Virus record (IMG/VR): IMGVR_UViG_3300028654_000001
Coordinates: 1-64,000 of that record
Length of the DNA: 64,000 nucleotides
Reading direction: 5' to 3' (one strand)
This document shows positions 3,456 through 46,257 of this stretch, in pieces (the stretch's first letter is position 1; each line of letters starts with the position of its first letter). The notes under the pieces were generated by a model that was not told the origin of the DNA, did no database searches, and saw nothing but the letters and a program-made list of their open reading frames with translations. The position numbers and the translations under genes were made by a program.

Positions 3456-3483
3456 CACTAAGCTACTTATAGATCGATCAGAG

Positions 3484-9883: not shown

Positions 9884-10112
9884 GATTCACGCTAAGATCA
9901 ACCTCACCTGTCACTGGATGCTCATACCCGACTATCTCTTTACATGTAGAACATATGAGTGTGCAATAAGGTCTAATCTCTAACCTAAGTAAAGACCACC
10001 TCCACCTCTGAACTTGTCCACGTAAGAATGGGTCAAAAGGAGAGGCACCGCAATGAGGACAGCTCTCGATTGGTGAGGGTTTGTCTAGAAGAACAGCGCA
10101 TTCAATCGGCAT
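9813..10112 (-). CDS. Small Zn-ribbon protein
   Basis: CPHCG...CSTC; ATG 10112 lies inside the tag region of the upstream gene. Confidence 0.55.
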   Translation of the reverse strand: MPIECAVLLDKPSPIESCPHCGASPFDPFLRGQVQRWRWSLLRLEIRPYCTLICSTCKEIVGYEHPVTGEVDLSVNPIRLLSRLGGKPPRNPQCSGRSD

Positions 10113-10578
10113 CGTCAAGAACCCTCTCGAATCGAGTTCGGGGTTCAACAATAATCCCGTCAGCGATCAACTCAGCTTTGAATGGAGATCCATAGGGGGT
10201 ACTGATAAGAAACTCCTTCAAGGCCTTCAAGATCCGTACATCATTGTCGATCAAGTTCCCTCGAACGAACACATCACCATTGCCCCTAAACCTCAATACC
10301 TCAATACCCTCGGTGACACAGAAGATGAGATCACCGGGGGCACTGAAAGCTTCTTGTGACTGAATTAGTAAACCCTCTGGAGCAGCTAGTGCCTCCACTT
10401 CCCAGGTATCTGCCAACAAGGCCTCTGCTGTTGGAAACCACCTCTCATTTCGAGAGGCTGAAGCTTCCCATATGAAGTCAGGAGGTTCACTCCGCGTGAG
10501 GCTTATCCAGAACTTATTCGGATCTTGCCGCATGCGGCGCCCAGCTTTTAGATATCCTAGAGCTTGAGAGAAGTTCAT
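10102..10578 (-). CDS. DUF2829 domain protein with C-terminal TRFERVL tag
   Basis: MNFSQALGYLKAGRRMR...WFPTAEALLADTWE; ends EPRTRFERVLDDAD. Confidence 0.8.
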   Translation of the reverse strand: MNFSQALGYLKAGRRMRQDPNKFWISLTRSEPPDFIWEASASRNERWFPTAEALLADTWEVEALAAPEGLLIQSQEAFSAPGDLIFCVTEGIEVLRFRGNGDVFVRGNLIDNDVRILKALKEFLISTPYGSPFKAELIADGIIVEPRTRFERVLDDAD

Positions 10579-16660: not shown

Positions 16661-17533
16661 TTACTCGGTGAGCAGATCTAGTTGGTTGGATCTTACACCG
16701 GGTGTCGGATCCAACCTCTTTTGAGCCAAAGAGATGGCAACCGGGTTCTGGTCAATACCCACCCAATCACGTCCTAGGTTCTGTGCTGCCACCAGTGTTG
16801 TACCAGATCCGCACATTGGATCAAGAATACGCCCGCCAGGATTGGTGCCCAGTCGAACAACCCTATCCAGCAACTTCAAAGGCTTTTGAGTTGGGTATCC
16901 GGTGGACTCCGAGTTCAAGGGAGTGTTGGCCTTCATCGCCGAGCAATCAGTCCAAACACTCCCCATCCGGCGCCCCTTGTCTTCGTAGTACCGATAGGCC
17001 TTCCCATTGATGACTCGTTCCCGGTACCGCCTCCCTGACTCGTCGACGGACTTGAAGTGCATGTTCCGGCTGGTCTCGGCATACGGCTCTCGAACCTCTG
17101 GGTCATCCGAGTTGTAGGTGAACTCATCCCCGCGGGAGTAGACCAGGATCGTTTGGTGGGTGACACTCAGGCCCTTCTTGCCTCGAGCCCCATTCCCGGG
17201 AACCCAAATGATCTCCCCTCGAAAGTTTGGCTTGCCAAAGATATCATCCGCCAGAAGTTTGGCTTCGTGAACCCCCCTGAAGTCCAAGTGGAGCCACAAG
17301 CTACCATTGGGGTTGAGGGCAGAGTGAAGAACCCTCAACCGTGGCTCTAGCATCGAGCAGAAGCCCTCGATACCACCCCAGGAGTCTTGGTACATCACAT
17401 CACCATCCACACGTGCCCCAAAGCCACTACGAGCCGAGTGTGAGTATCCAGTATTGAATGGGGGATCAACGTAAATGAGGTCGAACAGACCCACCTTTGG
17501 AACCAGATCCAGGCAGTCACCATGGTACAACAT
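16661..17533 (-). CDS. DNA adenine methyltransferase, beta class
   Basis: IYVDPPF, YPTQKP and DPMCGSGTT motifs. Confidence 0.93.
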   Translation of the reverse strand: MLYHGDCLDLVPKVGLFDLIYVDPPFNTGYSHSARSGFGARVDGDVMYQDSWGGIEGFCSMLEPRLRVLHSALNPNGSLWLHLDFRGVHEAKLLADDIFGKPNFRGEIIWVPGNGARGKKGLSVTHQTILVYSRGDEFTYNSDDPEVREPYAETSRNMHFKSVDESGRRYRERVINGKAYRYYEDKGRRMGSVWTDCSAMKANTPLNSESTGYPTQKPLKLLDRVVRLGTNPGGRILDPMCGSGTTLVAAQNLGRDWVGIDQNPVAISLAQKRLDPTPGVRSNQLDLLTE

Positions 17534-18024
17534 CAGATCACGTCTTTACGTTCGAATCGAGTCGGGACTTTGGCGTGCACTCGAGCCTCATATTCTTCCT
17601 TGTCATGAATCTGTCTTCGAGTCTGCACAGCTATCGCTGTAGTAGCCCCCTCCTCATCCCATAAGCTCTCGAGCTGGGAAACCTCCTCTTCTGGAGAGAG
17701 ATGGTTTGCACGAATAACTTCTCTATCCCAATCATTGAAGGAAACTGGTGGGGGTTGAGGAGCCCCTTTATTCAGTTCATTCACCAGCTGCATCCTACCC
17801 GCCAAACTTCTGAGTGAGTTCCAAAGTGGGTCATCTTGTTCGATAGTGGCTAGGAGTGATCGAAGGGCTATTACCCAAATTGTTTCAGTATTGGTACAAT
17901 CGGAACAAGCAAATCCAATAGTGCGATCCCTCGGATCATCACAACAGTACACAGAATGCCTGGTCTCCTGCACATGTTGGCGGGCTGCTTGGAACAACTC
18001 AGGGAAGTTTGGATACTCTGGCAC
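17533..18024 (-). CDS. CxxC protein with C-terminal PTRFER tag; paralogue of 18032..18454
   Basis: ARQHVQE..H...DD...IGFACSDC core; ends KVPTRFERKDVI. Confidence 0.75.
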   Translation of the reverse strand: MPEYPNFPELFQAARQHVQETRHSVYCCDDPRDRTIGFACSDCTNTETIWVIALRSLLATIEQDDPLWNSLRSLAGRMQLVNELNKGAPQPPPVSFNDWDREVIRANHLSPEEEVSQLESLWDEEGATTAIAVQTRRQIHDKEEYEARVHAKVPTRFERKDVI

Positions 18025-19698: not shown

Positions 19699-22167
19699 GT
19701 GACAACTGAACGCTTCGTCAATCAAGCAAGTACAGCTTTGTCCTCATCGGTTGGAGCTGGTGACCTAACCTTCTCAGTCCAGAGTACTACCCATTTTCCG
19801 ACTCAACCTGAGTTCAGGATTCGAATTGGCCAAGAACTCATGTTGGTAACCGGAGTCTCGGGTACCTCTTGGACAGTGACCCGTGGGATCGAAGGGACTA
19901 CCGCGGTTTCACATGCACCAGGTTCGACCGTTGTAGCTGTTCTCACTGGTGGTGGACTCGATGAGATGCGAACGGAGATCGAAGCTGAGAACAAGACTCT
20001 CAACTATGTAGCCATCGATGGTAGTGTAGATGACATGCCAGCATTTACTGCTAAATTAGCTTCAGCAGCAAGTACTGGGTATCGAGTACAACTGAATGCC
20101 GGGAATACAATTCAGTTCAAGACACCCCCTGATGGTAGTGGTACTTATGCTCCACCAAATTCTACTCCAAACCTGAGTAGTGGGGAGTACATGACGTGTG
20201 CTCCAGGTACAAATCTCAGGTTTGACATGACCTATCGCTTCGGGTTGTATGGGAGAGCTAACCTGTCCCCTGGGAGCACCGTTGCTTCTCCTCCTGCAAC
20301 CAGGGCTGCCAACAACAACATAATTATAGTCAACCCCTGGGGTATAACTCCTGCAGTTGGGTACGTTATCTGGGTTGAGCAGTACATGGGAGTTACCCCG
20401 CAAGTGAGCGGGTGTACATATACTATCAAGGAACTTGGTGTTTCCACCATAGGGATCACTGACGTAACGGCCACCACTCTCTATGGGGGTGGCGGGACTC
20501 TCAACGGACTGACCCTCAAGCTCAACATTGATGGGGCTGGAGAGCAGACACTTACGTTATCCGGAGCTGGGAATACAACAACCCTTATCACTCTCATTGC
20601 AGCGATAGTTGTTAAGTGGCCTTCTTTGCTGCAAGTGGGAACTGGTGGTGCATCAGGGAACAACCTACTCATCTCCTCGAAGTCGATTGTGATCGGAGCT
20701 GGTACCGCAAACACAGCTCTAGGTCTCACCGCTGGTGTTCCAACCTATGTTGCTGTTCTGCTCGACCGATCTATTGTGTGGGAGCATTCAATTGGCGACT
20801 CAGTTACCAGTGCCCCCGACTACCCGAAGGACATCTTACTTGACTTCACAGGAGCTAATGTCAGTGGGTACGCAAACCAGCTTATTGAGTTCACGCAGGC
20901 CCAAAGGGCTACAGTCAATGGACTCAACTATCAACTAACGAATGACCAGATCCCGTTCCTCGGTGGGACTGCTACTCTTGCATTTGATGTAGCAAGTCGC
21001 GAATGCACACTATCGAACTCAACGATTGAATTTCCGAATAACCCCTACTACATAGGGAGCAATGGCTTTTACGGTCAGTCAAATGAAGGAACCTTGCTGT
21101 GGAATAATCGAATCCGCAATGCCAGAGCGCAGGGGTACTCCTTCATGGACTGTTATGCCTGCAACGCCATTGGGAACATAACCTCTGACTGTGATTGGGG
21201 TCAAGTTGCACAAGTATTTGTGGATGGTACTTTTGGTTGTTTAGATTGTGCATTCGTTGCATGTGCTGACATTGGAAGTGAAGTAGGGCAGTGGCTTTGG
21301 GGTTCTAAAAGAACAAAAACCCTTGGGTTATCGAGCACTAAGAACCCCCAGTACGGGCTTCTAGTTGATCGCAATAATGAGACCGCAACATTTACAAATT
21401 GCAGCTATACCAAGGCTCCTATTGGTATTTATATCGACGCTACTGCAACTGGAACCTCATTCACCCAGCTGAATACTGACGAGTGTCTTACTGGAATTGT
21501 TATTGCTGGGGCAGCTACCATATCACAGTGGCATCACCACAGCACTCGAACTGATCCTGGTGCAACAGGGGTGTTTGTATCTGGAGTCGGCACTAACATC
21601 ATCCGCGACATAGATCTGAAGATGAGTGGAAGTGGAATCGCGGTTGATGTTGGTACTACGGGTACTCTACTACTGGATGGTGGGAGAATAGAGACGGGAC
21701 CTACAGGTTATTGTTTGCGTGTACAGACAGCAGCTCGTATCAGACTGTCCAACATAACCTTTGCTGGTGGTGTTGGGATCTCTTGCTCAAGTGGTACTAT
21801 TGAGATAGGGCCAAACTGTGACTTTAGTGCTATAACAGAGAATCAACAATTTCTCGTGATTGCCCCGGGTTTGGTTACATTTCAGCAGACCGGTGGGGTT
21901 CTCTCGTATGCTGGCAGCAATCGATTCATACTACTAAGTGAGTGCTACAATACCACCATAGAGATATCGGCCTCAGCCTCAGCGAGTGGTGTTGGCCTAC
22001 CTGGGATACCTGGACTTCAGTTCACGGTAGTAAATAACAACACAAACCCGATGTTCGTTATCTCTAGGGCGGCAGGTGATACCGGAGTTACGATTGCCGG
22101 AGGCAAGACAGCTATTGTTAGGGTAGACTCGACTAACCACTGTAAGCGGGTAACCGCTGATCTATGA
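19699..22167 (+). CDS. Tail fibre / tailspike paralogue 2 with probable parallel beta-helix
   Basis: Shared N-terminal anchor; DGSVDDMPAF start of a pectin-lyase-like region followed by repetitive beta strands. Confidence 0.8.
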   Translation: MTTERFVNQASTALSSSVGAGDLTFSVQSTTHFPTQPEFRIRIGQELMLVTGVSGTSWTVTRGIEGTTAVSHAPGSTVVAVLTGGGLDEMRTEIEAENKTLNYVAIDGSVDDMPAFTAKLASAASTGYRVQLNAGNTIQFKTPPDGSGTYAPPNSTPNLSSGEYMTCAPGTNLRFDMTYRFGLYGRANLSPGSTVASPPATRAANNNIIIVNPWGITPAVGYVIWVEQYMGVTPQVSGCTYTIKELGVSTIGITDVTATTLYGGGGTLNGLTLKLNIDGAGEQTLTLSGAGNTTTLITLIAAIVVKWPSLLQVGTGGASGNNLLISSKSIVIGAGTANTALGLTAGVPTYVAVLLDRSIVWEHSIGDSVTSAPDYPKDILLDFTGANVSGYANQLIEFTQAQRATVNGLNYQLTNDQIPFLGGTATLAFDVASRECTLSNSTIEFPNNPYYIGSNGFYGQSNEGTLLWNNRIRNARAQGYSFMDCYACNAIGNITSDCDWGQVAQVFVDGTFGCLDCAFVACADIGSEVGQWLWGSKRTKTLGLSSTKNPQYGLLVDRNNETATFTNCSYTKAPIGIYIDATATGTSFTQLNTDECLTGIVIAGAATISQWHHHSTRTDPGATGVFVSGVGTNIIRDIDLKMSGSGIAVDVGTTGTLLLDGGRIETGPTGYCLRVQTAARIRLSNITFAGGVGISCSSGTIEIGPNCDFSAITENQQFLVIAPGLVTFQQTGGVLSYAGSNRFILLSECYNTTIEISASASASGVGLPGIPGLQFTVVNNNTNPMFVISRAAGDTGVTIAGGKTAIVRVDSTNHCKRVTADL

Positions 22168-29553: not shown

Positions 29554-30003
29554 GTGCTCCTTCGCATCTATCAACTCCAAGATGACACGGAACCTTGGTT
29601 CCAGAAATCTGCAAAGGTTCCTCTCATAATCATAGCCAAAACCATGAGTGGTACTTTCAGTATTTCGTTACCTGAGCGTGCCAAAGTCCCACGAGACTCT
29701 ATAGGAGTGACTCCCGGGGAGCCCCCTTATGAAACCGCCAAGAGATCTATTCTTGAAAAAGCTCGAGAGATTTGGTCTTGTGTCAAAAAGAAGGGGTATT
29801 CGGATACTGGGTACTTCTATGGTACCTTCAATCCAACACATCAGTTGTCAACTCAAAGTAAGGGTATTGTTGGTAGCATAGGAATTTGCTACTGCCCACA
29901 GGAAGCAACACCTGGCTTCACCAGTGTATCCATAGAGGATATCGAATTTGAGGAGGAACCAAAGTTAGTCCCTACCAGGTTCGAACGTGAGGACGTGATC
30001 TGA
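29554..30003 (+). CDS. Hypothetical protein with C-terminal tag
   Basis: Ends LVPTRFEREDVI. Confidence 0.7.
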   Translation: MLLRIYQLQDDTEPWFQKSAKVPLIIIAKTMSGTFSISLPERAKVPRDSIGVTPGEPPYETAKRSILEKAREIWSCVKKKGYSDTGYFYGTFNPTHQLSTQSKGIVGSIGICYCPQEATPGFTSVSIEDIEFEEEPKLVPTRFEREDVI

Positions 30004-30516
30004 GTGCCCGATGAAGAACTTCCCCAGGCGTACGTCAAAGAGGTCGACGGTCAACTTGTCTTGATTGACCCAGTTGCAGCCGGAGTCCTCCAAGCTATCA
30101 ATCAGTACAACGGTAGTAACTGCAGGCATACCCTAGAGATTCAGTTAGAACGGGTGGTTCACTTCACTCGCAGGATTAGAGAACTTAGGAAGAACCCTGC
30201 CGAGGTTACCATTGTACTCCTCAACGTGAATGACCCCTGGGGAGGCGCCATGGCAGAGATTCTGATGCCTGGCCATGACTGGAAACCCTATCGAGACCGA
30301 GGGGAGGTGCCCTTCGCTCGAGGGTTAGCCGGTCGCGAGGGGTTGCAGGGTGTCTTAGACGAAATAGACCCGAAAGAGGGAGCCAAGCTCCGTGAAGCGG
30401 GTCCAGTGGTTACCGTGGTCGTAATGGATCACGGAGTAGTAGAAGTCTTCAAGAAAGGTGACTGGGAGGACGACTACATTCCAACTCGTTTAGAGAGGGT
30501 TGCTGACTCAGAGTAA
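30004..30516 (+). CDS. Hypothetical protein with C-terminal tag
   Basis: Ends YIPTRLERVADSE. Confidence 0.75.
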   Translation: MPDEELPQAYVKEVDGQLVLIDPVAAGVLQAINQYNGSNCRHTLEIQLERVVHFTRRIRELRKNPAEVTIVLLNVNDPWGGAMAEILMPGHDWKPYRDRGEVPFARGLAGREGLQGVLDEIDPKEGAKLREAGPVVTVVVMDHGVVEVFKKGDWEDDYIPTRLERVADSE

Positions 30517-30528
30517 CTTGAGGTCTCA

Positions 30529-30747
30529 ATGAGAGTATTCTGTAACAACTGCGCGTGTTCCCCACCAATAGGACTATACACTTGCCTTAAGGAGCACCCT
30601 ATTGTCTACGCAGGGTTAATGGATCCGGAGACCAAGAAGTTCAATAGACTAATGATTAGTGCGGATAGTAATGAGTGCCCTGACTTCGTGGACATGGTGA
30701 ATAGGCCAACCAGGTTTGAGAGAATCCTCGACGATGACATCCTGTAA
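30529..30747 (+). CDS. Cys/His Zn-binding family member with tag
   Basis: CNNC...CLKEH...CPD...PTRFERILDDDIL. Confidence 0.75.
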   Translation: MRVFCNNCACSPPIGLYTCLKEHPIVYAGLMDPETKKFNRLMISADSNECPDFVDMVNRPTRFERILDDDIL

Positions 30748-30955
30748 CTACTGCGCCAACATCACTGGAAGAGGGGGAAAACCTAAGTGCCTCAAGGGTC
30801 ATCTCCTAAGGTCCACCCCAGTGTTTGTAGGGGAGTTAAGAACTGAGTTCCTGAACGTGCTAAGGTATGAGCCTGAGCCCTGTCCAGATATGGAATTCCG
30901 CCGTCTCTATCGACCAACACGCTTCGAAAAGATCCTCTATGACCCCGTCTTGTGA
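30734..30955 (+). CDS. Cys/His Zn-binding family member with tag
   Basis: MTSCNYC...CLKGH...CPD...PTRFEKIL; start moved to 30734. Confidence 0.75.
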   Translation: MTSCNYCANITGRGGKPKCLKGHLLRSTPVFVGELRTEFLNVLRYEPEPCPDMEFRRLYRPTRFEKILYDPVL

Positions 30956-31169
30956 TCGATGTACCAAGAAACCTGCACATCCATCGGCAAGAAAACTGGC
31001 AGTTCAGTTCAGGGTACCTACGGTTTGTTCTAGGGGGCACGCGTTAGTGACCAGTAAGTTTACTCATACCTTCCTTCGAGTCATTGGAGAAGATATTGCT
31101 CCCTGTCCAGATTTCGAATTTGATGCCCCAAGACTAACTAGGTTTGAACGAATACTTAGAGAAGAATGA
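30939..31169 (+). CDS. Cys/His Zn-binding family member with tag
   Basis: MTPSCDRC...CSRGH...CPD...LTRFERIL; start moved to 30939. Confidence 0.75.
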   Translation: MTPSCDRCTKKPAHPSARKLAVQFRVPTVCSRGHALVTSKFTHTFLRVIGEDIAPCPDFEFDAPRLTRFERILREE

Positions 31170-31411
31170 GCACCATCTGCAACGATTGTGAGTACTTCCA
31201 TAAGTTAGGATCTGACGTCCTTGGGAGACTAGCACCACGAAAGTGGATCTGCGTGATGGTCCATCCAATAACACCCCTTCAAAAAGTCAGTAGGTCCTCT
31301 GAGGATCCACCGAAGTTCACCTACAAGAACGGTGATACTTGCAAGGAATATCGGTACGGTGGCCCGAGGCCGTCTCGACTCGAGAGGGTGGTTAGGGTTG
31401 ATATTCTGTGA
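31166..31411 (+). CDS. Cys/His Zn-binding family member with tag
   Basis: CNDC...CVMVH...CKE...PSRLERVV. Confidence 0.75.
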   Translation: MSTICNDCEYFHKLGSDVLGRLAPRKWICVMVHPITPLQKVSRSSEDPPKFTYKNGDTCKEYRYGGPRPSRLERVVRVDIL

Positions 31412-31691
31412 TGATTGCCAGCACCACCCGCGCGTGTGGGGAGACTTCAACCCAGAGACAAGGGAGTGGTCTGGGATCTGTATGTGCGGGTGGAGAGTGC
31501 TAACCATCCTGTATATGGGCTCGGAACCCATCAAGAGAACTATAGCAAAGGGGAAGTTCACTAGTCCGACGGTGCGCCAAGACTATGATGACTGCAAGGA
31601 CTATGAGTTTGAGGGCCAGCGACTAACTCGGTTTGAAAGGATTCTGCTCCATAACTCATGCTTTCAAAAGTTCAGTGATTCGAACCACTGA
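31398..31691 (+). CDS. Cys Zn-binding family member with tag
   Basis: Probable TTG start; IFCDDC...CMCG...CKD...LTRFERIL. Confidence 0.7.
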   Translation: MIFCDDCQHHPRVWGDFNPETREWSGICMCGWRVLTILYMGSEPIKRTIAKGKFTSPTVRQDYDDCKDYEFEGQRLTRFERILLHNSCFQKFSDSNH

Positions 31692-31692
31692 A

Positions 31693-31734
31693 TAAGCTTG
31701 TACTTACTACAAGTTAGTAGTAAGTACAAGCTTA
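31693..31734. terminator. Perfect 18-bp inverted repeat between convergent arrays
   Basis: TAAGCTTGTACTTACTAC-AAGTTA-GTAGTAAGTACAAGCTTA. Confidence 0.7.
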
Positions 31735-31792
31735 AATGTAGCATAAAGTTCAAGAAAAAGTTGGTGTTACAGAGTCCGGTCAGTCGGTATTA

Positions 31793-31993
31793 CTAGATCT
31801 CTCGATCAGGACAATCGTCACAGTCCTTGCGAATCAAACCAGGATGCTTTAATTGAGGGACAGATCTCCCGTTCATCCTAAGAGCCCGTACCGAGTGGCC
31901 CTTGTCGCAAGTAATGACTAACTCGTTTCGATAGACTGGTTCAGCATTCTCTTGCGGTGGGAGGTTCTTGCATTCATCACAAAGTTTCAGCAT
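31793..31993 (-). CDS. Cys/His Zn-binding family member lacking the tag
   Basis: MLKLCDEC...CDKGH...CPDREI. Confidence 0.7.
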   Translation of the reverse strand: MLKLCDECKNLPPQENAEPVYRNELVITCDKGHSVRALRMNGRSVPQLKHPGLIRKDCDDCPDREI

Positions 31994-32204
31994 TGAGGAT
32001 CCTCTCAAATCTAGTTGGATGTTCCGTGATATCCCTCTCCAAGCAAACTGAGGCATTTCGAACCAGACGAAGCTTAACTTTATGTCCTCCCGGGTTGATG
32101 TTGGTATACTTTATGAGGTGCCCACGTGAGCACATAGCTTCCCAGTCGCCCACGGTAACATCAGGAGGAGTGGGGCGCCACTTGCAGTTAGAGCAAAAGA
32201 TCAT
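31977..32204 (-). CDS. Cys/His Zn-binding family member with tag
   Basis: CSNC...CSRGH...CLE...PTRFERIL. Confidence 0.75.
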   Translation of the reverse strand: MIFCSNCKWRPTPPDVTVGDWEAMCSRGHLIKYTNINPGGHKVKLRLVRNASVCLERDITEHPTRFERILNAETL

Positions 32205-32607
32205 TCAAAACCCTCTCGAATCTGGTTGGGTGTGTCCCGTTATCATAGTCTGAACAGAAGTCTGAATTCTCGCGAATCAAACTTTTTAGAGGAGCATCAT
32301 AGAAGTAGTCTTGGGCTGCCAATAACTGATGCCCTTTATCACAGGCTAGAGAACGATTTCTGTGGAGTCTTTCAGTCAAAGGCGGCGGGGCCCACTTACA
32401 ATCGGTACAGAGGATCATTCTTGCACCACCCCCTTCAATATCTGGGCAAGGTGCTTGCCCAACAGGGTGTAGCCCAACACCAGAGGAGTTCTTACTAGCC
32501 CAAATTCTATGACGTTTTGCACAATCACCACGCCACTGATCTATATCGTAATCATCTAACCTAGGCCTACATAGAACGTGTTTGCACCCATTACAGATGG
32601 TATACAT
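32188..32607 (-). CDS. Tandem fusion of two Cys/His units with tag
   Basis: MYTICNGC...CAKRH...CPD then MILCTDC...CDKGH...CSD...PTRFERVL; GGTGTA 11 nt before ATG 32607. Confidence 0.75.
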   Translation of the reverse strand: MYTICNGCKHVLCRPRLDDYDIDQWRGDCAKRHRIWASKNSSGVGLHPVGQAPCPDIEGGGARMILCTDCKWAPPPLTERLHRNRSLACDKGHQLLAAQDYFYDAPLKSLIRENSDFCSDYDNGTHPTRFERVLNDLLL

Positions 32608-34551: not shown

Positions 34552-34812
34552 ATGGTCACCAACTGCCTCCATTGTATCCATTGTCCTCAGGTCGATGATT
34601 CTGAGGACTTACGCGGGGGTTGGGCTGTCTGCAAGAAAGGGTTTGATGTTCAATATTGGACTAGACCCAAAATACCATCCGGGGGATCTGGGTTAAAACA
34701 CATGTCTGTCGTAAGGGATGGATCCGACTGCCCACTTTATGATACTGGGGAGTATGAAGGCCCAAGACCCTCCCGCCTCGATAAAATCCTGCAAGATGGC
34801 TACCCTCTGTGA
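34552..34812 (+). CDS. Cys Zn-binding family member with tag
   Basis: MVTNCLHC...CKKG...CPLY...PSRLDKILQDGYPL; GGTGTA 9 nt upstream. Confidence 0.75.
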   Translation: MVTNCLHCIHCPQVDDSEDLRGGWAVCKKGFDVQYWTRPKIPSGGSGLKHMSVVRDGSDCPLYDTGEYEGPRPSRLDKILQDGYPL

Positions 34813-35018
34813 CCAGTGTCCCCCACAGGCCCCCCTTGATCGACGGTAGAGATCGATGCAATAAAGGTCATCCAGTTGTAGTGGTTAGAGTATACGAACC
34901 TGAAGGCTCAAAGTTTTCCAAGAGAGTTCTGCACCGAGATGACACAGATGAGGTCTGTTCTGATTTCCCACACGCGACAAGGTTTGAGAGAATCCTCCGA
35001 GATGGCTACCCTTTGTAG
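34809..35018 (+). CDS. Family member lacking the first CxxC, with tag
   Basis: CNKGH...CSD...ATRFERILRDGYPL. Confidence 0.7.
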   Translation: MTSVPHRPPLIDGRDRCNKGHPVVVVRVYEPEGSKFSKRVLHRDDTDEVCSDFPHATRFERILRDGYPL

Positions 35019-36242: not shown

Positions 36243-36740
36243 TCAGGGAGCAGGGTGAACTACCCTAAATCCTACATTCTCGCTGTAGTAACCGTTTGAT
36301 TCCCCAAACCATCGAACGGTTACCGTACCACGAACCGTAGAAAATCGGTAGAAAGTCCAAGTATAGCTTTCAGGTTGGTAGTCAAGATATGGATCTGGCT
36401 CAGAAGACAGTTCTTCAGCTTCGACTATCGGGTACCCGATTAGATCACTCAAGTCACCAATGATGTCTTCGATCTTCACGCTCTCACAGCAATCCTGCTG
36501 ATGATAGAGCTCGAAGCGAGTCCCATTTGTGGTAACGAACACCAGGGCCTCCTCACCAACACTTCCGATCACCTCCCTCAGGGTGATCCCAACCATGTCG
36601 CTAAGCTCCTCTGGGAGTCGATCTGGAGTTTGAAGATAGGAAGGGAGTTGAGCTCGCGGTGACTGCGGTTCAGATTCAATCTCTCTCTTAGGTCGCAAAC
36701 CCTCCCAGAATGATTCGATGTCGTCCAGGTCATTTGGCAT
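36243..36740 (-). CDS. Common phage domain (HxQDCCESV, DUF7448-like) with N-terminal acidic-Trp tag
   Basis: MPNDLDDIESFWEGLRP, then HQQDCCESVKIEDIIGDL...TWTFY...WFGESNGYYSE. Confidence 0.8.
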   Translation of the reverse strand: MPNDLDDIESFWEGLRPKREIESEPQSPRAQLPSYLQTPDRLPEELSDMVGITLREVIGSVGEEALVFVTTNGTRFELYHQQDCCESVKIEDIIGDLSDLIGYPIVEAEELSSEPDPYLDYQPESYTWTFYRFSTVRGTVTVRWFGESNGYYSENVGFRVVHPAP

Positions 36741-38926: not shown

Positions 38927-39139
38927 TCATACAAGGTCGTCTTTGAGAACTCTCTCTAATCGGGTAAGTCTCTGCCCAGTATCATGATCTGGGCAGGACT
39001 CATCATCGGCTCTCGCCGCTATCCCTTTCTCACCGGTCTTACGATTCACCGGTTGAATAAGAGTGTACCCACGATTACAGGCTAATCCAAGCTTGGTGTG
39101 CTCGGAGCTCCACTTGCACTCGCTACACGATAATCTCAC
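38927..39139 (-). CDS. Cys Zn-binding family member with tag
   Basis: GTG 39139; SCSEC...CNRG...CPD...LTRLERVL. Confidence 0.7.
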   Translation of the reverse strand: MRLSCSECKWSSEHTKLGLACNRGYTLIQPVNRKTGEKGIAARADDESCPDHDTGQRLTRLERVLKDDLV

Positions 39140-39500
39140 CCTGAAGGATCCTTTCAAATCGAGTTGGATACAGGGTCTCAGCCTCTTCCTCGCGCTCAAC
39201 AAAACCTGGACGGCAGTAGGATAACTGAAGGAAGCCACCCTCTGGCGTAGTATATATGATCTTCCAATCATACAAGTTAAGGTGATCTATATTTACAATC
39301 CACTCAAGGCAGTACTTCATCAGGAAGTAGGGATCTTCTCTGACCCAAGCCAACCTAGGCCACTTAACAACGGCGCTCGTAAGCTCATTCTTCAGAGCAT
39401 GAACGAACTCAGAGATCCCAGCCCCAAGCCCGTTAACCTTGAATAGAGGGTGACCCGAATCGTCTTCCGAGACTGCTACGAGAAGTTCCTTGTAACTCAC
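39123..39500 (-). CDS. Hypothetical protein with C-terminal tag
   Basis: Ends LYPTRFERILQGEIIV. Confidence 0.7.
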   Translation of the reverse strand: MSYKELLVAVSEDDSGHPLFKVNGLGAGISEFVHALKNELTSAVVKWPRLAWVREDPYFLMKYCLEWIVNIDHLNLYDWKIIYTTPEGGFLQLSYCRPGFVEREEEAETLYPTRFERILQGEIIV

Positions 39501-39745
39501 AGGACAACCCCACTCAAGATCCTATCAAACCTCGTGGGCCTAATATCTAGTTTGTCACCACAAATCTCGCTGTGGGTCATGCTGAGCACCCTTGGAACCT
39601 CTTGTGTTGCCTTATCGGGAATCCATATGTAGAACACATAATGCCCCTTGCAACAGGGGGCATACCCGGAGTAGTAAGTTGGGTCATCCTCCACGTGAAA
39701 CTTATGTGAACAATCCATGCAGTTGGTCAGAGCCATAGGCATCAC
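39497..39745 (-). CDS. Cys/His Zn-binding family member with tag
   Basis: CMDC...CCKGH...CGD...PTRFDRIL. Confidence 0.75.
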   Translation of the reverse strand: MMPMALTNCMDCSHKFHVEDDPTYYSGYAPCCKGHYVFYIWIPDKATQEVPRVLSMTHSEICGDKLDIRPTRFDRILSGVVL

Positions 39746-39795
39746 TCATGCACGAGATTATCACGAACCATGCTGATCCGGTGTATGGATCAACA

Positions 39796-40284
39796 ATGGC
39801 CGACGAGATCGAAGACTACTGGGAGGGGATTAGGCCCCAGAGACCAAATGACACCGTTCCAGCTCCGAAGATCGAGGAGTATCAAGAGCCATTTAGTTAC
39901 ACCCATGAAGACTTAGGAATTGGGCTCCGAGCTATTAGTCGTCTTCGAACGGAGTTGTCAACACGAGAAGATGCGGAACAGTTAGAAAGAACCCTGCGTC
40001 TGGGCCTTGGAATACCCGATAGTATCCCCTCTCTGACCCCCCTCAACTCTCTTCAATCTTGGATGGACACTTCTGAAGTCAGAGCGGCGCTTGGTCTACA
40101 ACAGTCACAGAATCAAGCCATAACGAACCTCATTAGGGCTTTCGAAGCCCTAGGGTATCGCTGTGAAGCGTCATTTAGCAACTTCAGGCTCTACGTGGCC
40201 CTACCTGCCATCACCCCAGATAATTGGTCAGCTCATCAATTAACTGAGGGTGGGGTTCAGTTGATCTTGAATTTACCAAGATAG
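39796..40284 (+). CDS. N-tagged protein with ALGYxCE domain
   Basis: MADEIEDYWEGIRP; CGGTGTA 10 nt upstream of ATG 39796. Confidence 0.75.
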   Translation: MADEIEDYWEGIRPQRPNDTVPAPKIEEYQEPFSYTHEDLGIGLRAISRLRTELSTREDAEQLERTLRLGLGIPDSIPSLTPLNSLQSWMDTSEVRAALGLQQSQNQAITNLIRAFEALGYRCEASFSNFRLYVALPAITPDNWSAHQLTEGGVQLILNLPR

Positions 40285-40799: not shown

Positions 40800-41066
40800 A
40801 TGTCAAAACTAACTATTGAGCCTTCCCAGTACTCTAGAAGTGACGGCATTATCATGAACAAACTCCCTTCCGGGAGCTGGGTTATCTGTCGTGGAGGAGG
40901 TTGCTTCTTCTTCGACAAGACCAAGATGGATGTAGATCCTTGGGTATTCAAGGCAGCCAATAGCATTCAGGAGCTCGAAGTGTTAGGGATGTCATTTGGG
41001 GAGGCTTACCGATTCCTCGAAGTGATCCCACCTAAAGAACAAGTAAAGAGAGTGCCTAACTCATGA
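40800..41066 (+). CDS. Hypothetical protein
   Basis: ATGA-coupled to the next gene. Confidence 0.6.
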   Translation: MSKLTIEPSQYSRSDGIIMNKLPSGSWVICRGGGCFFFDKTKMDVDPWVFKAANSIQELEVLGMSFGEAYRFLEVIPPKEQVKRVPNS

Positions 41067-41647
41067 AGCGGTCACCCTGGGGAAAAGTTGAACTCGAGCA
41101 CAAGATTCGTGAAGGGATGACTTCCGTCAGCACAGCGGGTCATGGTGGGATCAAACTCAGTGCAACCCTCAATGCCAAAATTCCAAAGATCTTCCGCTGC
41201 AAGGGCGGGTGGTACGAGGAAGATTGTGAGTGGGCTATAGTTGCCCTCATCTTCCCGGAAGCCTTCCCAGGTCAGGAGGGGCAAGTTCTCACCATCATCA
41301 AGAACAACTGGCCAGAAAGCTACACGATCTGGTCTGGAAAACCAGTAACCCTTGACGAAAGCTATGAGCTGCGTCGACAGCACTTCCGAGCGGTCACAGC
41401 ATCAAAGTTTGTGGTTAGGGCAGCCTGGGGAGACTGGCACCCCAACGTCCCTTCCGGAATGGTAGGGGTTCTTGCCCGTAAGTTTGAACCAGAAGAGGAG
41501 GCTTACTTCCTCATTAAAGTCGACGAATACGGGGATGCGGACAAGCCGTTCGGATTCGTAATCGACCCCAAACGTCACGCACCATGGGGCGGCCCCAACA
41601 ATAAGTCAACCACCAAGGAGAGTGCCTTAGGGACGCCGACTCGATAG
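41063..41647 (+). CDS. DUF7007-like protein
   Basis: SPWG...STAGHGGIKLS...WYEEDCEWAIV. Confidence 0.7.
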   Translation: MKRSPWGKVELEHKIREGMTSVSTAGHGGIKLSATLNAKIPKIFRCKGGWYEEDCEWAIVALIFPEAFPGQEGQVLTIIKNNWPESYTIWSGKPVTLDESYELRRQHFRAVTASKFVVRAAWGDWHPNVPSGMVGVLARKFEPEEEAYFLIKVDEYGDADKPFGFVIDPKRHAPWGGPNNKSTTKESALGTPTR

Positions 41648-42242: not shown

Positions 42243-42716
42243 TTAATCCTCTGGGAATTCCACTACAATTCCCACTCCACCGTTCTGGGTAACCCGAGTT
42301 CCAATCCTGAAGTGGGGCAGTTCATTGGGGACTGGCTCTATAAGGAACCACACTGCTCGGTTCCCATTTGAGAGTCGCTCTTGTCCAACAGAGCCGGTGA
42401 TCCCAAGAGCCGCAAGAGATGACATGAGACGGTTGAGAGGGCTGTTTCCATTAGGCTCTTCCCTATTACTAAGACCATCCATGTAGGCGTGATTTCTAAT
42501 CCTCTGCTCCCTCGTAGATAGGGGTTCGAACTCAGCCCAAGTGTCAGGAGGCCTCCTCCGAAGAGAGCTGATCGTTCTGAGCCCAGTATCTGGATTATGC
42601 TGGTCAATGAGCCCATGCGGCGGACCAGGTCTCTCAGCAGGCTCAGTAGGGGACCTGGGAGACTCTCTACGAGGTCTGATCCCTTCCCAATAGGAGTCAA
42701 TGTCATCGTCAGGCAT
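42243..42716 (-). CDS. N-tagged hypothetical protein
   Basis: Begins MPDDDIDSYWEGIRP. Confidence 0.75.
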   Translation of the reverse strand: MPDDDIDSYWEGIRPRRESPRSPTEPAERPGPPHGLIDQHNPDTGLRTISSLRRRPPDTWAEFEPLSTREQRIRNHAYMDGLSNREEPNGNSPLNRLMSSLAALGITGSVGQERLSNGNRAVWFLIEPVPNELPHFRIGTRVTQNGGVGIVVEFPED

Positions 42717-44573: not shown

Positions 44574-44972
44574 CTACTCCATGGCCTTATCAATCCACGA
44601 GTAGTCCTCTTCTTGCTTAGGTTCAGGCCCTTCAAGAGTCAACAAGAGGTCTGACTCTACATCTTCTATCGACTTTGGCTTAAGGGACTCTTCAATCCAC
44701 GAGTAGTCATCATACTCATCCTCTGGAAGATCCTTTATGGTTAGGACCTGGATGGCTAACTTAACAGCTATATCAATAGGACTCAGGCCCTCAACTTCTG
44801 CCACTACACGAATATAGTCGAAAAAGTCGAAGTAGAACTCGCTACCCCACCTAAAGCCAGGTTTGTGACCAGCACTTGCTAACCTAACCAGAAGTCGACT
44901 AATCCACTTGGTAACGGTCTCGTTTCCGAACCTCTTAGCAAGTTGAGTCCTTGAAGTTCCTGGTCTAGTCAT
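44574..44972 (-). CDS. Hypothetical protein with duplicated DYSWI motif
   Basis: DDYSWIEES and EDYSWIDKA. Confidence 0.65.
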   Translation of the reverse strand: MTRPGTSRTQLAKRFGNETVTKWISRLLVRLASAGHKPGFRWGSEFYFDFFDYIRVVAEVEGLSPIDIAVKLAIQVLTIKDLPEDEYDDYSWIEESLKPKSIEDVESDLLLTLEGPEPKQEEDYSWIDKAME

Positions 44973-45165
44973 GTAGGATCCGTTCGAATCGAGTCAAGTG
45001 CACAAGTGGTCGGTACCGGGCACACTTGAAAACCTCAGCCGTGGAGGTCCAATGACGAAGACCCTCCAAGCAAACTAATTCCCACCACGGGCGATCCCCC
45101 GAGGGGAATGGCGACGGTGGGTTCACATTACTCAGGCATGATTCGCAGAGGTTGGAGTCAGTCAC
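44965..45165 (-). CDS. Cys Zn-binding family member with tag
   Basis: GTG 45165; CESC...CLEG...C...LTRFERILHD. Confidence 0.7.
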   Translation of the reverse strand: MTDSNLCESCLSNVNPPSPFPSGDRPWWELVCLEGLRHWTSTAEVFKCARYRPLVHLTRFERILHD

Positions 45166-45475
45166 CGGAGAGAATTCGTTCGAATCGAGTTGGGTAGGTC
45201 TCTTCGACTTTAGAGTATTCGTCCCGAAAGTCAACGCAGCGGCCATTCTCTACCGGAACTAAGTGGGCTCGCATCTCATGGTTGCCAACCCTCAGTGTGA
45301 TCTTGGCCACATGGTTAGCCTTGCAGGTAACTCGGTACATCTCAACCGCTGTCTTTGGGCGATGAGTTCTGAGAGTCGGATCAAGTGGCACCATAAACTC
45401 AGTTGATCTAGGAAAAACCCTATCCTTGTACAGATAGTCATCCGGGCAATGGTTGCAGTAGTTACAGATTGGCAT
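45158..45475 (-). CDS. Cys/His Zn-binding family member with tag
   Basis: CNYC...CKANH...CVD...PTRFERILSGD. Confidence 0.75.
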   Translation of the reverse strand: MPICNYCNHCPDDYLYKDRVFPRSTEFMVPLDPTLRTHRPKTAVEMYRVTCKANHVAKITLRVGNHEMRAHLVPVENGRCVDFRDEYSKVEETYPTRFERILSGD

Positions 45476-45748
45476 TCAGATCCAAGATTCAATTGCTGGC
45501 AGATCCTGGGTACTTGGCTCAGCCAGGCATACCCGCCCTGGAGGGATAAGCTTCCTCGCTTCCTCCAAGGTATTAGTCAGTTGGTAGTCTACATGCATAT
45601 ATACCTTCTCATTCAACGCTGTTGACTCACGCACTACATAGTTCTCAGGGAAGTCGAATGGGTGCTTGTAGATCGTGAGGACACTAAGACCTTTAGACAT
45701 ATCCAAGTCTTGAATTATATTGGTGCTTTCTAGAACTACTCTAGTCAT
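45476..45748 (-). CDS. Hypothetical phage protein
   Basis: TIYKHPFDFPENYVVR...TLEEARKLIP...IESWI. Confidence 0.7.
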   Translation of the reverse strand: MTRVVLESTNIIQDLDMSKGLSVLTIYKHPFDFPENYVVRESTALNEKVYMHVDYQLTNTLEEARKLIPPGRVCLAEPSTQDLPAIESWI

Positions 45749-46257
45749 TATGTCCTAGAGGAATCGTCATCGAGAACCCTCTCGAACCGAGTTGGCCGTG
45801 GTCCTCTGTAGGACGCTGGCTTGGCATCAACACCTATCGGACCATGTTCTCGAACCAACTCACCTTCCAAATCAACCTCTCGAATGACCACATATGGTAG
45901 AAGTCGACTCAGGTCCCCCAGACTATTCCTTGCAAGCTCACGAACGTTTTCCGTGAGAAGTGGACTATCAGGACTGAGCAGAGCGAACTCAATCGTGGGG
46001 TTTACCTGGCCGGCACTGGCCTCAATTCGTAAATCTTGAATAAGACTTACTTGGTTTCCATTCGAGTAGACCTTAGTATTCTGAACCGACAAGGGTCTAT
46101 CGCCCTCATCACTCTCGGGGTGTGTCCTTTCAGATGTAATCACCAATGCGTCTTCACTTAGAATGACCACTTGATGAAGTCGGTTTGGCCACGAGGCATC
46201 TGTTCTACGCTGTATAATGAATACCCTATCGAACTCCCCCACTTCGATCGTTGGCAT
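45748..46257 (-). CDS. Hypothetical protein with C-terminal tag
   Basis: Ends GPRPTRFERVLDDDSSRT. Confidence 0.7.
   Translation of the reverse strand: MPTIEVGEFDRVFIIQRRTDASWPNRLHQVVILSEDALVITSERTHPESDEGDRPLSVQNTKVYSNGNQVSLIQDLRIEASAGQVNPTIEFALLSPDSPLLTENVRELARNSLGDLSRLLPYVVIREVDLEGELVREHGPIGVDAKPASYRGPRPTRFERVLDDDSSRT

What the first reader, a model, noticed from the sequence alone, without database searches (positions are those of the whole stretch)
30529..32607. Convergent arrays of a hyper-diverged small Cys/His zinc-binding family
Seen: five plus-strand genes (30529-31691) face three minus-strand genes (31793-32607) across a perfect hairpin. All follow CxxC-x(n)-C-x2-[GH]-x(n)-C-x-[DE], with almost no conservation between ligands. 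More copies lie at 34552, 34809, 38927, 39497, 44965 and 45158, giving about 14 genes. One gene is a two-unit fusion (32188), one has lost the tag (31793) and one has lost the first CxxC (34809). Inference: a fixed metal scaffold with variable loops and a constant docking tail resembles an adaptor library, in which the variable part picks a target and the tail recruits a shared effector, for example against host defence proteins.
Basis: partly seen in the sequence, partly recalled or inferred. Interest (0 to 1): 0.75.

Follow-up and report, generated by a model that had tools for sequence, protein, structure and literature searches.

The report
Portable C-terminal tag on huge-phage proteins
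A 512-kb soil phage carries a real family of about 15 small four-cysteine proteins, but their constant tail (PTRFERIL) is a portable C-terminal peptide on about 60 unrelated phage proteins (7-8% of its genes), so it looks like a sorting or docking signal whose receptor is unknown.

Summary
The window is the left end of a complete 512,571-bp huge phage from rhizosphere soil. It holds 14 genes (15 units) of a homologous small protein family with four conserved cysteines, including the convergent arrays across a perfect 18-bp hairpin. The "hyper-divergence" is old. Each paralogue has syntenic orthologues in related phages, under purifying selection (dN/dS 0.06-0.23).

The main correction concerns the tail. 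It is not a feature of this family. P-T-R-F-E-R, followed by IL-x-D/E-D/E or E-D-V-I-stop, ends about 60 ORFs of at least ten unrelated kinds. Its codons vary freely at synonymous sites (omega 0.045), so selection acts on the peptide. Related phages carry it at similar density. Three more distant relatives lack it, and a search of 1.84 billion representative proteins found it only in this clade.

One gene cluster is made almost entirely of tailed genes. It contains a Cdc48-like AAA+ ATPase and two tailed proteins built from fragments of the phage's own major capsid protein. A distant lineage shows the same association.

Best reading: a modular docking or sorting peptide for one clade-specific receptor. 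The favoured destination is the procapsid, by analogy with the T4 capsid-targeting sequence, and this is only inferred. No fold match and no receptor could be established.

The parts
30529..30747 (+). Zn-family member 1 (72 aa), tail RPTRFERILDDDIL
   Evidence: AF2 model pLDDT 75. Orthologues P0011, L010 and L013.
30734..30955 (+). Zn-family member 2 (73 aa). Its start overlaps the tail codons of member 1.
30939..31169 (+). Zn-family member 3 (76 aa)
31166..31411 (+). Zn-family member 4 (81 aa), tail variant PSRLERVV
31398..31691 (+). Zn-family member 5 (97 aa, TTG start). The tail is followed by 14 extra residues.
   Evidence: (P0008, P0014)
31693..31734 (.). Perfect 18-bp-stem hairpin between the convergent arrays. 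It is A+T-rich with no T-run and is unique in the genome. It is probably a bidirectional transcript end.
   Evidence: The terminator scan did not call it.
31793..31993 (-). Zn-family member without a tail (66 aa). Its orthologues also lack the tail.
   Evidence: E 3.5e-12
31977..32204 (-). Zn-family member (75 aa)
32188..32607 (-). Two-unit fusion (139 aa). The first unit has no tail. The second unit carries the tail.
   Evidence: (P0002-P0006)
34552..34812 (+). Zn-family member (86 aa), tail PSRLDKILQDGYPL
34796..35018 (+). Zn-family member split by a +1 frameshift in a C6 run (34841-34846). CxxC lies in one frame and the rest plus the tail in the next.
   Evidence: intact orthologue L010:18728-18946; same sequence in 3 runs
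38927..39139 (-). Zn-family member (70 aa, GTG start)
39497..39736 (-). Zn-family member (79 aa)
44965..45165 (-). Zn-family member (66 aa, GTG start)
45158..45475 (-). Zn-family member with a long insert (105 aa). It is the weakest member by body alone.
   Evidence: E 0.14
10102..10578 (-). Unrelated tailed protein (158 aa) with a weak Tad2-like N-terminal domain, tail TRFERVLDDAD
   Evidence: PF11195, E 1.7e-4, below cut-off
17533..18024 (-). Unrelated tailed protein, variant B tail (VPTRFERKDVI-stop)
29554..30003 (+). Unrelated tailed protein, variant B tail (VPTRFEREDVI-stop)
30004..30516 (+). Unrelated tailed protein (170 aa), tail IPTRLERVADSE. It is conserved upstream of the array in relatives.
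39123..39500 (-). Unrelated tailed protein (125 aa), tail YPTRFERILQGEIIV
45748..46257 (-). Unrelated tailed protein (169 aa), tail YRGPRPTRFERVLDDDSSRT

Best explanation
SHOWN
- The window's cysteine-rich genes are a genuine, anciently duplicated family of small proteins of about 60-100 residues. Four conserved cysteines (CxxC, then C, then C) most likely hold one zinc ion around a beta-hairpin.
- Each paralogue is kept under purifying selection.
- The constant tail is a separate, portable module, in two forms: [R/Y]-P-T-R-F-E-R-I-L-x-[D/E]-[D/E], and P-P-T-R-F-E-R-E-D-V-I-stop.
- The tail is predicted to form a short amphipathic helix. In larger proteins it sits behind a proline-rich linker.
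- It ends about 60 otherwise unrelated ORFs, which is 7-8% of the genes of this 512-kb phage.

INFERRED
- The tail is a docking or sorting signal. It brings all these proteins to one receptor specific to this phage clade.
- The variable bodies supply individual activities. The Zn family is the largest class of body.

FAVOURED DESTINATION (inference, about 0.3-0.35 on its own)
- The interior of the assembling head. The tagged proteins would then be packaged and enter the host with the DNA.
- This would work like the N-terminal capsid-targeting sequence shared by the diverse T4 internal proteins, and like the C-terminal cargo peptides of HK97-fold encapsulins.
- The neighbouring Cdc48-like AAA+ ATPase and the tailed capsid-protein fragments would belong to the same pathway.

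The confidence given (0.6) is for the general docking/sorting-tag statement.
For: THE TAIL IS SELECTED AS A PROTEIN
- All six Arg codons and all six Leu codons are used at the invariant positions.
- Tail codons have omega 0.045, against 0.126 for the bodies.

POSITION AND ABUNDANCE
- 66 of 84 occurrences of the core motif lie within 15 residues of a stop codon.
- The DNA pattern for PTRFER occurs 36 times, and its control 0 times.
- 54 of about 747 greedily called genes carry the tail.
- TRFE and RFER are by far the most enriched C-terminal 4-mers in the genome.

MODULARITY
- The tail sits on the Zn family, on a second Cys family (CYCDxCG...LVR), on an 'ERFS' helical family, on a RecA/UvsX-like ATPase, on a Tad2-like protein and on capsid-protein fragments.
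- A tail-less family member and its tail-less orthologues are conserved.

HELIX
- AF2 predicts a helix at residues 62-69 in model 1.
- It predicts a helix at residues 55-61 in model 2, with pLDDT about 80.

CLADE RESTRICTION
- Related contigs have 29 hits in 228 kb and 18 hits in 145 kb, with controls at 0.
- LR745208.1, Tunturi_5 and phage G have none.
- A tail-only profile found 7 hits among 1.84 billion representatives, all from this clade.

LINK TO THE CAPSID AND THE AAA+ ATPase
- Protein 220848-221597 contains major capsid protein (MCP) residues 1-62.
- Protein 222714-223754 contains MCP residues 245-289 followed by 85-137.
- The cluster at 218.7-228.7 kb is almost entirely tailed genes around a Cdc48-like AAA+ ATPase.
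- That ATPase is absent from the three tail-less relatives. It is 76% identical in tailed relatives.
- A distant lineage (L106, AAA 43% identical) again has PTRFER-tailed genes next to the AAA. One of them carries an MCP fragment.

PRECEDENT
Against: - No receptor is identified.
- The co-folding job (MCP + AAA + a Zn protein) gave no verdict, so it counts neither way.
- LR745208.1 has an MCP about 82-84% identical yet no tails. The capsid protein alone is therefore unlikely to be the receptor.
- None of the recognised head-assembly proteins carries the tail. This covers the protease, the portal, the Q-rich putative scaffold and the putative decoration protein.
- Tailed genes lie mostly far from the head module at 400-418 kb.
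- A RecA-like ATPase and a Tad2-like sponge are not obvious virion cargo.
- L105, with a homologous AAA, shows no tails in its 21 kb.
- Zinc binding is inferred from the cysteines only.
- The second fold model is of low confidence.
Confidence: 0.6

Rival explanations
1. The tail is a recognition motif for the phage's own Cdc48/Vps4-like AAA+ ATPase (225639-226838). Tagged proteins are its substrates or adaptors. They would be unfolded, remodelled, disassembled or handed to a translocation step. This would work like the C-terminal MIM helices that bind the Vps4 MIT domain, or the short motifs of p97 cofactors. It may overlap with the capsid model.
For: - The AAA gene sits inside a 10-kb cluster in which nearly every other gene is tailed.
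- It is a classical-clade AAA. Cdc48/p97 D1 is the best PDB match, at 7.6e-19.
- It has an unassigned N-terminal domain of about 190 residues.
- It is absent from the three tail-less relatives and present in tailed relatives.
- In L106, tailed genes lie 4-6 kb from the AAA homologue.
Against: - Hundreds of other genes share the same presence/absence pattern.
- L105 has the AAA but no tail in its 21 kb.
- The AAA family is spread across many huge-phage contigs whose tail status is unknown.
- The N-domain matches no known peptide-binding domain.
- The co-folding job gave no verdict.
Confidence: 0.2
2. The tail docks the tagged proteins onto a host hub such as RNA polymerase, the replisome, a protease or the membrane. 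This is essentially the first reader's adaptor-library idea, with a host rather than a phage partner.
For: - The clade-restricted motif would fit a host-specific target.
- The tagged proteins are small ORFans typical of host-takeover genes.
- A Tad2-like domain suggests anti-defence roles.
- The acidic-then-hydrophobic ending of variant B (EDVI-COOH) recalls the C-terminal tips of SSB-type hub ligands. This comparison is from general knowledge and was not tested.
Against: - The host is unknown, so nothing could be tested.
- The phage has no bacterial-type SSB or beta-clamp of its own.
- The tailed capsid fragments and the AAA linkage point to a phage-internal partner.
- About 60 ligands for a single host hub has no precedent.
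Confidence: 0.12
3. The tail is a degron or timing signal. It marks a cohort of proteins for removal by a protease, or is the cleavage site of the prohead protease, which would cut after the invariant Glu in R-F-E|R.
For: - The position is strictly C-terminal.
- Glu is invariant, and known prohead proteases of T4 and phiKZ cut after Glu (PMC5694885 and PMC7411985 describe such processing in giant phages).
- A prohead protease is encoded at 406716-408386.
Against: - The motif does not match the known L/I-x-E or S/A/G-x-E sites.
- The ends are acidic, unlike typical bacterial C-terminal degrons.
- Strong conservation of 9-12 residues is more than a cleavage site needs.
Confidence: 0.06
4. The tail is not a protein feature. 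It would be a DNA or RNA element at gene ends (a repeat, terminator or ribosome-binding region), a by-product of overlapping starts, or chance.
For: - In the tandem arrays the last tail codons overlap the next gene's start (MTSC..., MTPSC...). This explains some endings such as DDIL and DPVL.
Against: - Synonymous codons vary freely at every conserved residue.
- dS is saturated while omega is 0.045.
- The tail occurs in the same frame on both strands, and on solitary genes.
- The reversed-pattern control gives 0 hits against 36.
Confidence: 0.01

Closest known systems
T4-type internal proteins (IPI, IPII, IPIII, Alt) with the capsid-targeting sequence (PMC3012670; Repoila et al. 1994, cited there)
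   Same: - Small, highly diverse phage proteins share only a short conserved terminal peptide.
- That peptide is a portable address label.
- At least one cargo (IPI*, 76 aa) is a compact injected anti-restriction protein.
   Different: - The T4 tag is N-terminal, about 10 residues long, unrelated in sequence and removed by the prohead protease.
- T4 has only a handful of such proteins per phage. Here the tag is C-terminal and sits on about 60 proteins.
- Packaging is unproven here.
Encapsulin cargo-loading peptides and the C-terminal capsid-targeting tails of HK97-type scaffold and protease proteins
   Same: - A short C-terminal peptide on unrelated cargo binds the inside of an HK97-fold shell.
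- This phage's capsid protein has the HK97 fold. It matches phrog_2522 and is 38% identical to phage G gp27 (6WKK).
   Different: - The sequence motif is unrelated to the Gly/Ser-rich encapsulin peptides.
- Tailed genes are not in an operon with the shell gene.
- No binding has been shown.
Phage G lineage-specific expansion of a zinc ribbon, about 35 copies (Iyer et al. 2021, PMC7824862)
   Same: - The phage is a huge phage of the same capsid lineage.
- It has tandem arrays of dozens of small CxxC proteins.
- Those proteins end in a conserved C-terminal helix, YWKENDRYLAKIL.
   Different: - No homology is detectable (hhalign probability 0.2%).
- The ligand layout differs: CPIC...CxNxC, against CxxC...C...C here.
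- In phage G the C-terminal helix belongs to one family and is not portable.
Short linear motifs that recruit cofactors to AAA+ ATPases (MIM motifs for Vps4 MIT; VIM, VBM and SHP motifs for p97/Cdc48)
   Same: - Many unrelated proteins carry one short, often C-terminal, amphipathic helix.
- A classical-clade AAA+ is encoded among the tagged genes.
   Different: - There is no sequence similarity to those motifs.
- No MIT or p97-N domain is detected.
- The comparison comes from general knowledge and was not tested.

Membership tests
Classical zinc ribbon | Two CxxC (or CxxH) knuckles, each at a beta-hairpin turn, that bind one Zn | tested here: not met
   - Only the first knuckle is a CxxC.
- The other two conserved Cys (C19 and C50 of the 72-aa member) lie 31 residues apart, with a beta-hairpin between them.
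Classical zinc ribbon | Structural similarity to solved zinc ribbons | tested here: not met
   - Foldseek against PDB: best E 2.2, TM under 0.31.
- AFDB clusters: best E 0.86.
- VIA-align against 48,161 chains: no match with Z of 2 or more.
- The model has pLDDT 75, so the absence of a match is weak evidence.
BED zinc finger (PF02892) | Pfam match above the gathering score across members | tested here: not met
   - One member only matches (ORF 30716-30955, the longer TTG-start reading of member 2): 21.3 bits against a cut-off of 20.6, over 28 residues.
- The other nine members scanned have no hit.
Phage G ZnR expansion (Iyer et al. 2021) | Homology to CPIC...CxNxCY...YWKENDRYL proteins | tested here: not met
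   Profile-profile comparison of A2 with A5: probability 0.2%, E 0.27, 11 columns aligned.
T4-type capsid-targeting sequence cargo | Conserved terminal peptide shared by otherwise unrelated small proteins | tested here: met
   About 60 ORFs of at least 10 unrelated kinds share the tail.
T4-type capsid-targeting sequence cargo | N-terminal tag followed by a prohead-protease site (L/I-x-E) | tested here: not met
   - The tag is C-terminal and its sequence is unrelated.
- A separate N-terminal tag, DDIESYWEGIRPxR, exists on 9 proteins. Its cleavage is unknown.
T4-type capsid-targeting sequence cargo | Physical presence of the tagged proteins in proheads or virions | not testable with these tools
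   - No cultured phage and no proteome are available.
- The co-fold with the capsid protein gave no verdict.
Encapsulin cargo-loading peptide | C-terminal peptide of about 10 residues on diverse cargo | tested here: met
   The tail ends 2-9 residues before the stop in most cases.
Encapsulin cargo-loading peptide | Cargo gene adjacent to the shell gene, and binding to the shell interior | tested here: not met
   - The capsid gene lies at 403.6 kb. Tailed genes lie at 10-134, 172-232, 244, 287-289, 318 and 502 kb.
- Binding was not testable.
Substrates or adaptors of a Cdc48/Vps4-like AAA+ | Co-occurrence and co-location of the motif-bearing genes with the ATPase | tested here: inconclusive
   - They are co-located in this genome, in L018/L019 and in L106.
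- The ATPase is absent from three tail-less relatives.
- L105 has the AAA but no tail in its 21 kb.

The most novel reading that the evidence does not exclude
This clade of huge soil phages runs its own protein-sorting system. A C-terminal address peptide (PTRFER...) and a second, N-terminal one (DDIESYWEGIRPxR) are read by phage-encoded machinery. That machinery would include a Cdc48-like AAA+ ATPase and capsid-protein-derived modules. It would deliver about 60 small effectors, including a library of about 15-23 zinc mini-proteins, into the head for co-injection or into another phage-built compartment. This would be the viral equivalent of a signal-peptide system.
Probability: 0.25. Interest if true: 0.9.

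Novelty: new variant of a known kind. Interest (0 to 1): 0.72.

Why it matters
- Most genes of huge phages are small and unannotated.
- One 9-12-residue tag joins 7-8% of this phage's genes into a single functional cohort, so one experiment on one receptor could explain them together.
- If the tag is a packaging signal, it defines a large injected arsenal and gives a ready handle for loading foreign proteins into a very large capsid.
- If the AAA+ ATPase reads it, it is a new kind of virus-encoded adaptor or substrate system.
- The finding also shows that expansions of small zinc proteins recur independently in the phage G capsid lineage.
- The tail is a simple sequence marker for finding members of this phage clade in soil metagenomes.

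Tried and rejected
1. DNA-repeat or chance origin of the tail. Rejected on codon variation, omega and controls.
2. Pfam and PHROGs on 10 Zn members and about 35 other tailed proteins. Results were almost empty.
3. Fold searches of the Zn model against PDB, AFDB clusters and VIA-wide, plus the ESM Atlas. Nothing was significant.
4. Second AF2 model, of the short subfamily. pLDDT was 58, so the common-fold test stays open.
5. Complex prediction with the capsid protein, the AAA and a Zn protein. It returned 'no answer', with partner pLDDT about 38. This is not evidence either way.
6. blastn of the region against INPHARED. No match.
7. Literature search for the motif string. Only artefacts came back.
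8. Word-index search restricted to the tail region. Only 2 candidates were returned, so the method is unsuited to a short motif.
9. Homology with the phage G ZnR family. Rejected.
10. The phage's own SSB or beta-clamp as the hub. Neither is encoded.
11. Capsid protein alone as the receptor. Weakened, because LR745208.1 has an MCP about 82-84% identical and no tails.
12. Assembly error as the cause of the 34809 frameshift. Rejected for the assemblies examined.
13. An alternative genetic code. Not needed, since TAA, TAG and TGA all end tailed genes.
14. Whole-record tail count for L105 and L106. The records are not held.
Full report
CONTEXT

The window is the first 64 kb of a single-contig virus record of 512,571 bp. 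The record has 49% G+C and direct terminal repeats, and CheckV rates it 100% complete. It carries 42 tRNA genes and a tmRNA in one block at 458-480 kb.

- The head module lies at 400-418 kb. It includes the large terminase, the portal, the prohead protease and a 289-aa HK97-type major capsid protein (MCP) matching phrog_2522.
- By MCP identity the relatives are the uncultured phage LR745208.1 (84%), Tunturiibacter phage Tunturi_5 (48%, host in the Acidobacteriota) and Bacillus phage G gp27 (38.5%).
- The same DNA is held by many rhizosphere and soil metagenome runs.

THE OBSERVATION

- Five overlapping plus-strand genes (30529-31691) face three minus-strand genes (31793-32607).
- Between them lies an 18-bp-stem, 6-nt-loop perfect inverted repeat at 31693-31734. 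It occurs once in the genome.
- Six more copies lie at 34552, 34796/34809, 38927, 39497, 44965 and 45158.
- In a 45-sequence alignment of paralogues and metagenomic orthologues, three cysteines are invariant and the fourth is at least 90% conserved. Mean column identity is only 17%.

The family does not rest on the tail. HMMs were built without the tail and without the tested paralogue group. They still recognise 13 of 14 window members at E 1e-12 to 4e-3 for a 5,000-sequence search space. Member 45158 is marginal. About eight shorter Cys-rich tailed proteins at 64-94 kb fit weakly or not at all.

- G at C3+3 occurs in 11 of 15 units.
- An aromatic residue or His at C3+4 occurs in 14 of 15 units.

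Three details need correcting.

1. 34809 has not lost its CxxC. MATLCDQC is encoded in the neighbouring frame (34796-34849). A C6 run at 34841-34846 carries one base too many. The orthologue in a related 303-kb contig is intact (L010:18728-18946). The C6 run is identical in contigs of three separate runs. The gene is therefore truly frameshifted in this population.
2. The tail-less member 31793 has tail-less orthologues at about 70% identity. The fold therefore does not need the tail.
3. The two-unit fusion has at least five orthologues.

NOT HYPER-DIVERGING

A profile search of 5.8 billion proteins found 27 relatives, all unnamed and mostly from soil assemblies. Related contigs keep the five-gene array in the same order.

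- Orthologue pairs have dN/dS of 0.06-0.23 with saturated dS.
- The low similarity between paralogues therefore reflects old duplications. Each copy has since been held in place.

THE TAIL IS THE LARGER FINDING

A six-frame scan of the whole genome shows that the tail is not specific to the Zn family. It has two forms.

- Form A is [R/Y]-P-T-R-F-E-R-I-L-x-[D/E]-[D/E], ending 2-9 residues before the stop. About 41 ORFs have it.
- Form B is P-P-T-R-F-E-R-[E/D]-[D/P/E]-V-I-stop. About 20 ORFs have it.

The statistics are strong.

- 66 of 84 occurrences of the core motif lie within 15 residues of a stop.
- The back-translated PTRFER pattern occurs 36 times, and its reversed control 0 times.
- TRFE and RFER are the most enriched C-terminal 4-mers in the genome.
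- 54 of about 747 crudely called genes are tailed. Their median length is 144 aa.
- Every invariant residue uses its full set of synonymous codons.
- Tail codons have omega 0.045.

The conservation is therefore at the peptide level. In the tandem arrays the residues after IL are partly dictated by the overlapping start of the next gene (MTSC..., MTPSC..., MIFC...). This explains endings such as DDIL and DPVL.

The bodies are unrelated to one another:

- the Zn family;
- a second Cys family (RCxxC...CYCDxCG...LVR) at 92, 102 and 128-129 kb;
- a helical 'ERFS' family at 102-113 kb;
- a RecA/UvsX/Sak4-like P-loop protein at 288.8 kb;
- a protein with a weak Tad2-like domain in the window, at 10102;
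- many ORFans.

AF2 places the tail in a short helix. Confidence reaches about 80 in the second model. In the larger proteins the tail follows Pro/Glu-rich linkers.

A second portable peptide exists as well. M-x-D-D-I-E-S-Y-W-E-G-[I/L]-R-P-x-R heads nine proteins of at least two unrelated kinds. Five of them are in the window.

DISTRIBUTION OF THE TAIL

- Related IMG/VR contigs carry the tail at similar density: 29 in 228 kb, 18 in 145 kb, controls 0.
- LR745208.1, Tunturi_5 and phage G have none.
- LR745208.1 shares only 116 of 944 ORFs of at least 100 aa with this phage, despite its conserved MCP.
- A tail-only profile run against 1.84 billion representative proteins returned seven hits, all from this clade.
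- A more distant lineage also has PTRFER-tailed genes. It is a 454-kb contig of GCA_040384025.1 with 56% G+C.

CLUES TO THE PARTNER

The stretch from 218.7 to 228.7 kb consists almost entirely of tailed genes. In its middle is a 399-aa classical AAA+ ATPase with no tail.

- Its best PDB matches are Cdc48/p97 D1, at E 7.6e-19.
- It has an unassigned N-domain of 190 residues and a poly-acidic C-terminus.

Two tailed proteins in this cluster are built from pieces of the phage's own MCP.

- Protein 220848-221597 holds MCP residues 1-62 (48% identity).
- Protein 222714-223754 holds MCP residues 245-289 joined to residues 85-137. This amounts to a permuted P-domain.

The AAA+ ATPase tracks the tail system only partly.

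- It is missing from the three tail-less relatives.
- It is 76% identical in tailed relatives.
- In the distant lineage L106 (AAA 43% identical), tailed genes sit 4-6 kb upstream of the AAA. One of them again carries an MCP fragment.
- Another AAA-bearing contig (L105) shows no tails in its 21 kb.
- The AAA family is widespread in huge-phage-sized contigs.

The conserved start of the MCP spine helix, KERRFDLIER, resembles the tail in the pattern R-F-[D/E]-x-I. That MCP motif is present in all MCPs of the lineage. The resemblance may be chance.

A co-folding job with the MCP, the AAA and a Zn protein returned no verdict and is not used as evidence.

INTERPRETATION

Shown:

- a real four-Cys family;
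- a portable, peptide-level, C-terminal motif on about 60 unrelated proteins;
- restriction of the motif to one clade;
- association of the motif with an AAA+ ATPase and with MCP-derived modules.

Inferred: the tail is a docking or sorting signal for one common receptor, probably phage-encoded. I put this general statement at about 0.6-0.8.

I favour the assembling head as the destination (about 0.3-0.35), for three reasons.

- HK97-fold shells are known to take cargo through C-terminal peptides.
- The tail recurs on MCP fragments.

Giant phage heads can hold about 50 protein species (PMC7411985, abstract seen). Zinc mini-proteins of about 70 residues could plausibly pass through a tail tube in the folded state, as has been proposed for IPI*.

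Against the head as destination:

- No canonical head protein carries the tail.
- A relative with a nearly identical MCP has none.
- A RecA-like ATPase is odd cargo.

A nucleic-acid-level artefact is refuted.

COMPARISON WITH KNOWN SYSTEMS

- The Zn module is not a classical zinc ribbon, because its second ligand pair is split by 31 residues. It has no structural neighbour.
- Phage G's '~35 copies of a ZnR' (PMC7824862) were located here as about 29 tandem CPIC...CxNxCY...YWKENDRYLAKIL proteins. They are an architectural parallel, with no detectable homology.
- The tail works like a T4 capsid-targeting sequence or an encapsulin cargo peptide, but it fails their defining sequence and position features. 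I file it as a new variant of the terminal address-peptide kind.

LIMITS

- The host is unknown and no isolate exists.
- Zinc binding is inferred.
- Gene calls are crude ORF calls.
- Only two folds were modelled.
- The receptor is unidentified.

Noticed in passing
own genome 113.7-115.8 kb and 124.3-126.0 kb (L003, L004), outside the window: There are two CRISPR-like arrays, each of about 25-30 repeats with a period of about 72 bp. They flank a Cas8c/Csd1-like gene (121597-123258, PF09709, E 1.5e-10) and a ResIII/Cas3-like helicase (118102-120501). This looks like a phage-encoded type I-C-like CRISPR-Cas system.
   Followed up: partly
window 36243-36740(-), 39748-40284(+), 42243-42716(-), 42709-43248(-), 53548-54411(+); also 78.6, 82.9, 172.8 and 175.2 kb: A second portable peptide sits at the N-terminus of nine proteins: M-x-D-D-I-E-S-Y-W-E-G-[I/L]-R-P-x-R. 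The proteins are of at least two unrelated kinds. One is DUF7448, and several share an 'ALGY-CE' C-terminal domain.
   Followed up: partly
own genome 220848-221597 and 222714-223754 (L006:848-1597, 2714-3754): Two tailed proteins are assembled from fragments of the phage's own major capsid protein. One holds the N-arm (residues 1-62). The other holds a permuted P-domain (residues 245-289 followed by 85-137). A similar fragment recurs in a distant lineage (L106:5451-5912).
   Followed up: partly
own genome 225639-226838 (L006:5639-6838): A Cdc48/p97-like single-cassette AAA+ ATPase has an unassigned 190-residue N-domain and a C-terminal tail of about 25 residues made of D and E. It sits inside a cluster of tailed genes. 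Homologues occur on many contigs of 200-480 kb.
   Followed up: partly
own genome 498602-498674(-) and 457935-458281(-): ARAGORN calls a tRNA with anticodon CUA, an amber-suppressor type labelled 'Pyl', and a tmRNA with tag VADLPRDSLGSG. They sit alongside 41 ordinary tRNAs. TAG still ends several tailed genes, so nothing in these genes indicates recoding.
   Followed up: no
window 34841-34846: A C6 homopolymer splits a Zn-family gene. It is identical in contigs of three runs. The contigs of a fourth run break exactly there, which may mean length heterogeneity.
   Followed up: partly
window 4473-5765(-), 19699-22167(+), 41063-41647(+), 48708-50285(-): Other annotated genes in the window are:
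- an N6/N4 DNA methylase;
- an 822-aa beta-helix protein;
- a DUF7007 protein;
- a 525-aa fusion of an NMT1/periplasmic-binding-like domain with an OmpA domain.
   Followed up: no
Bacillus phage G (JN638751.1) 26-33 kb and 352-371 kb (L065, L081, L082): The ZnR expansion reported by Iyer et al. was located here. It consists of about 29 tandem genes that share CPIC...CxNxCY and a C-terminal YWKENDRYLAKIL helix. Four short copies lie next to the capsid genes.
   Followed up: yes
own genome 403571-404440(-) (P0028) and MCPs of LR745208.1, Tunturi_5 and phage G: The start of the capsid-protein spine helix, KERRF[D/N][L/V][I/V]xR, is conserved across the lineage. It resembles the tail core in the pattern R-F-[D/E]-x-I. 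This could be mimicry or chance.
   Followed up: partly
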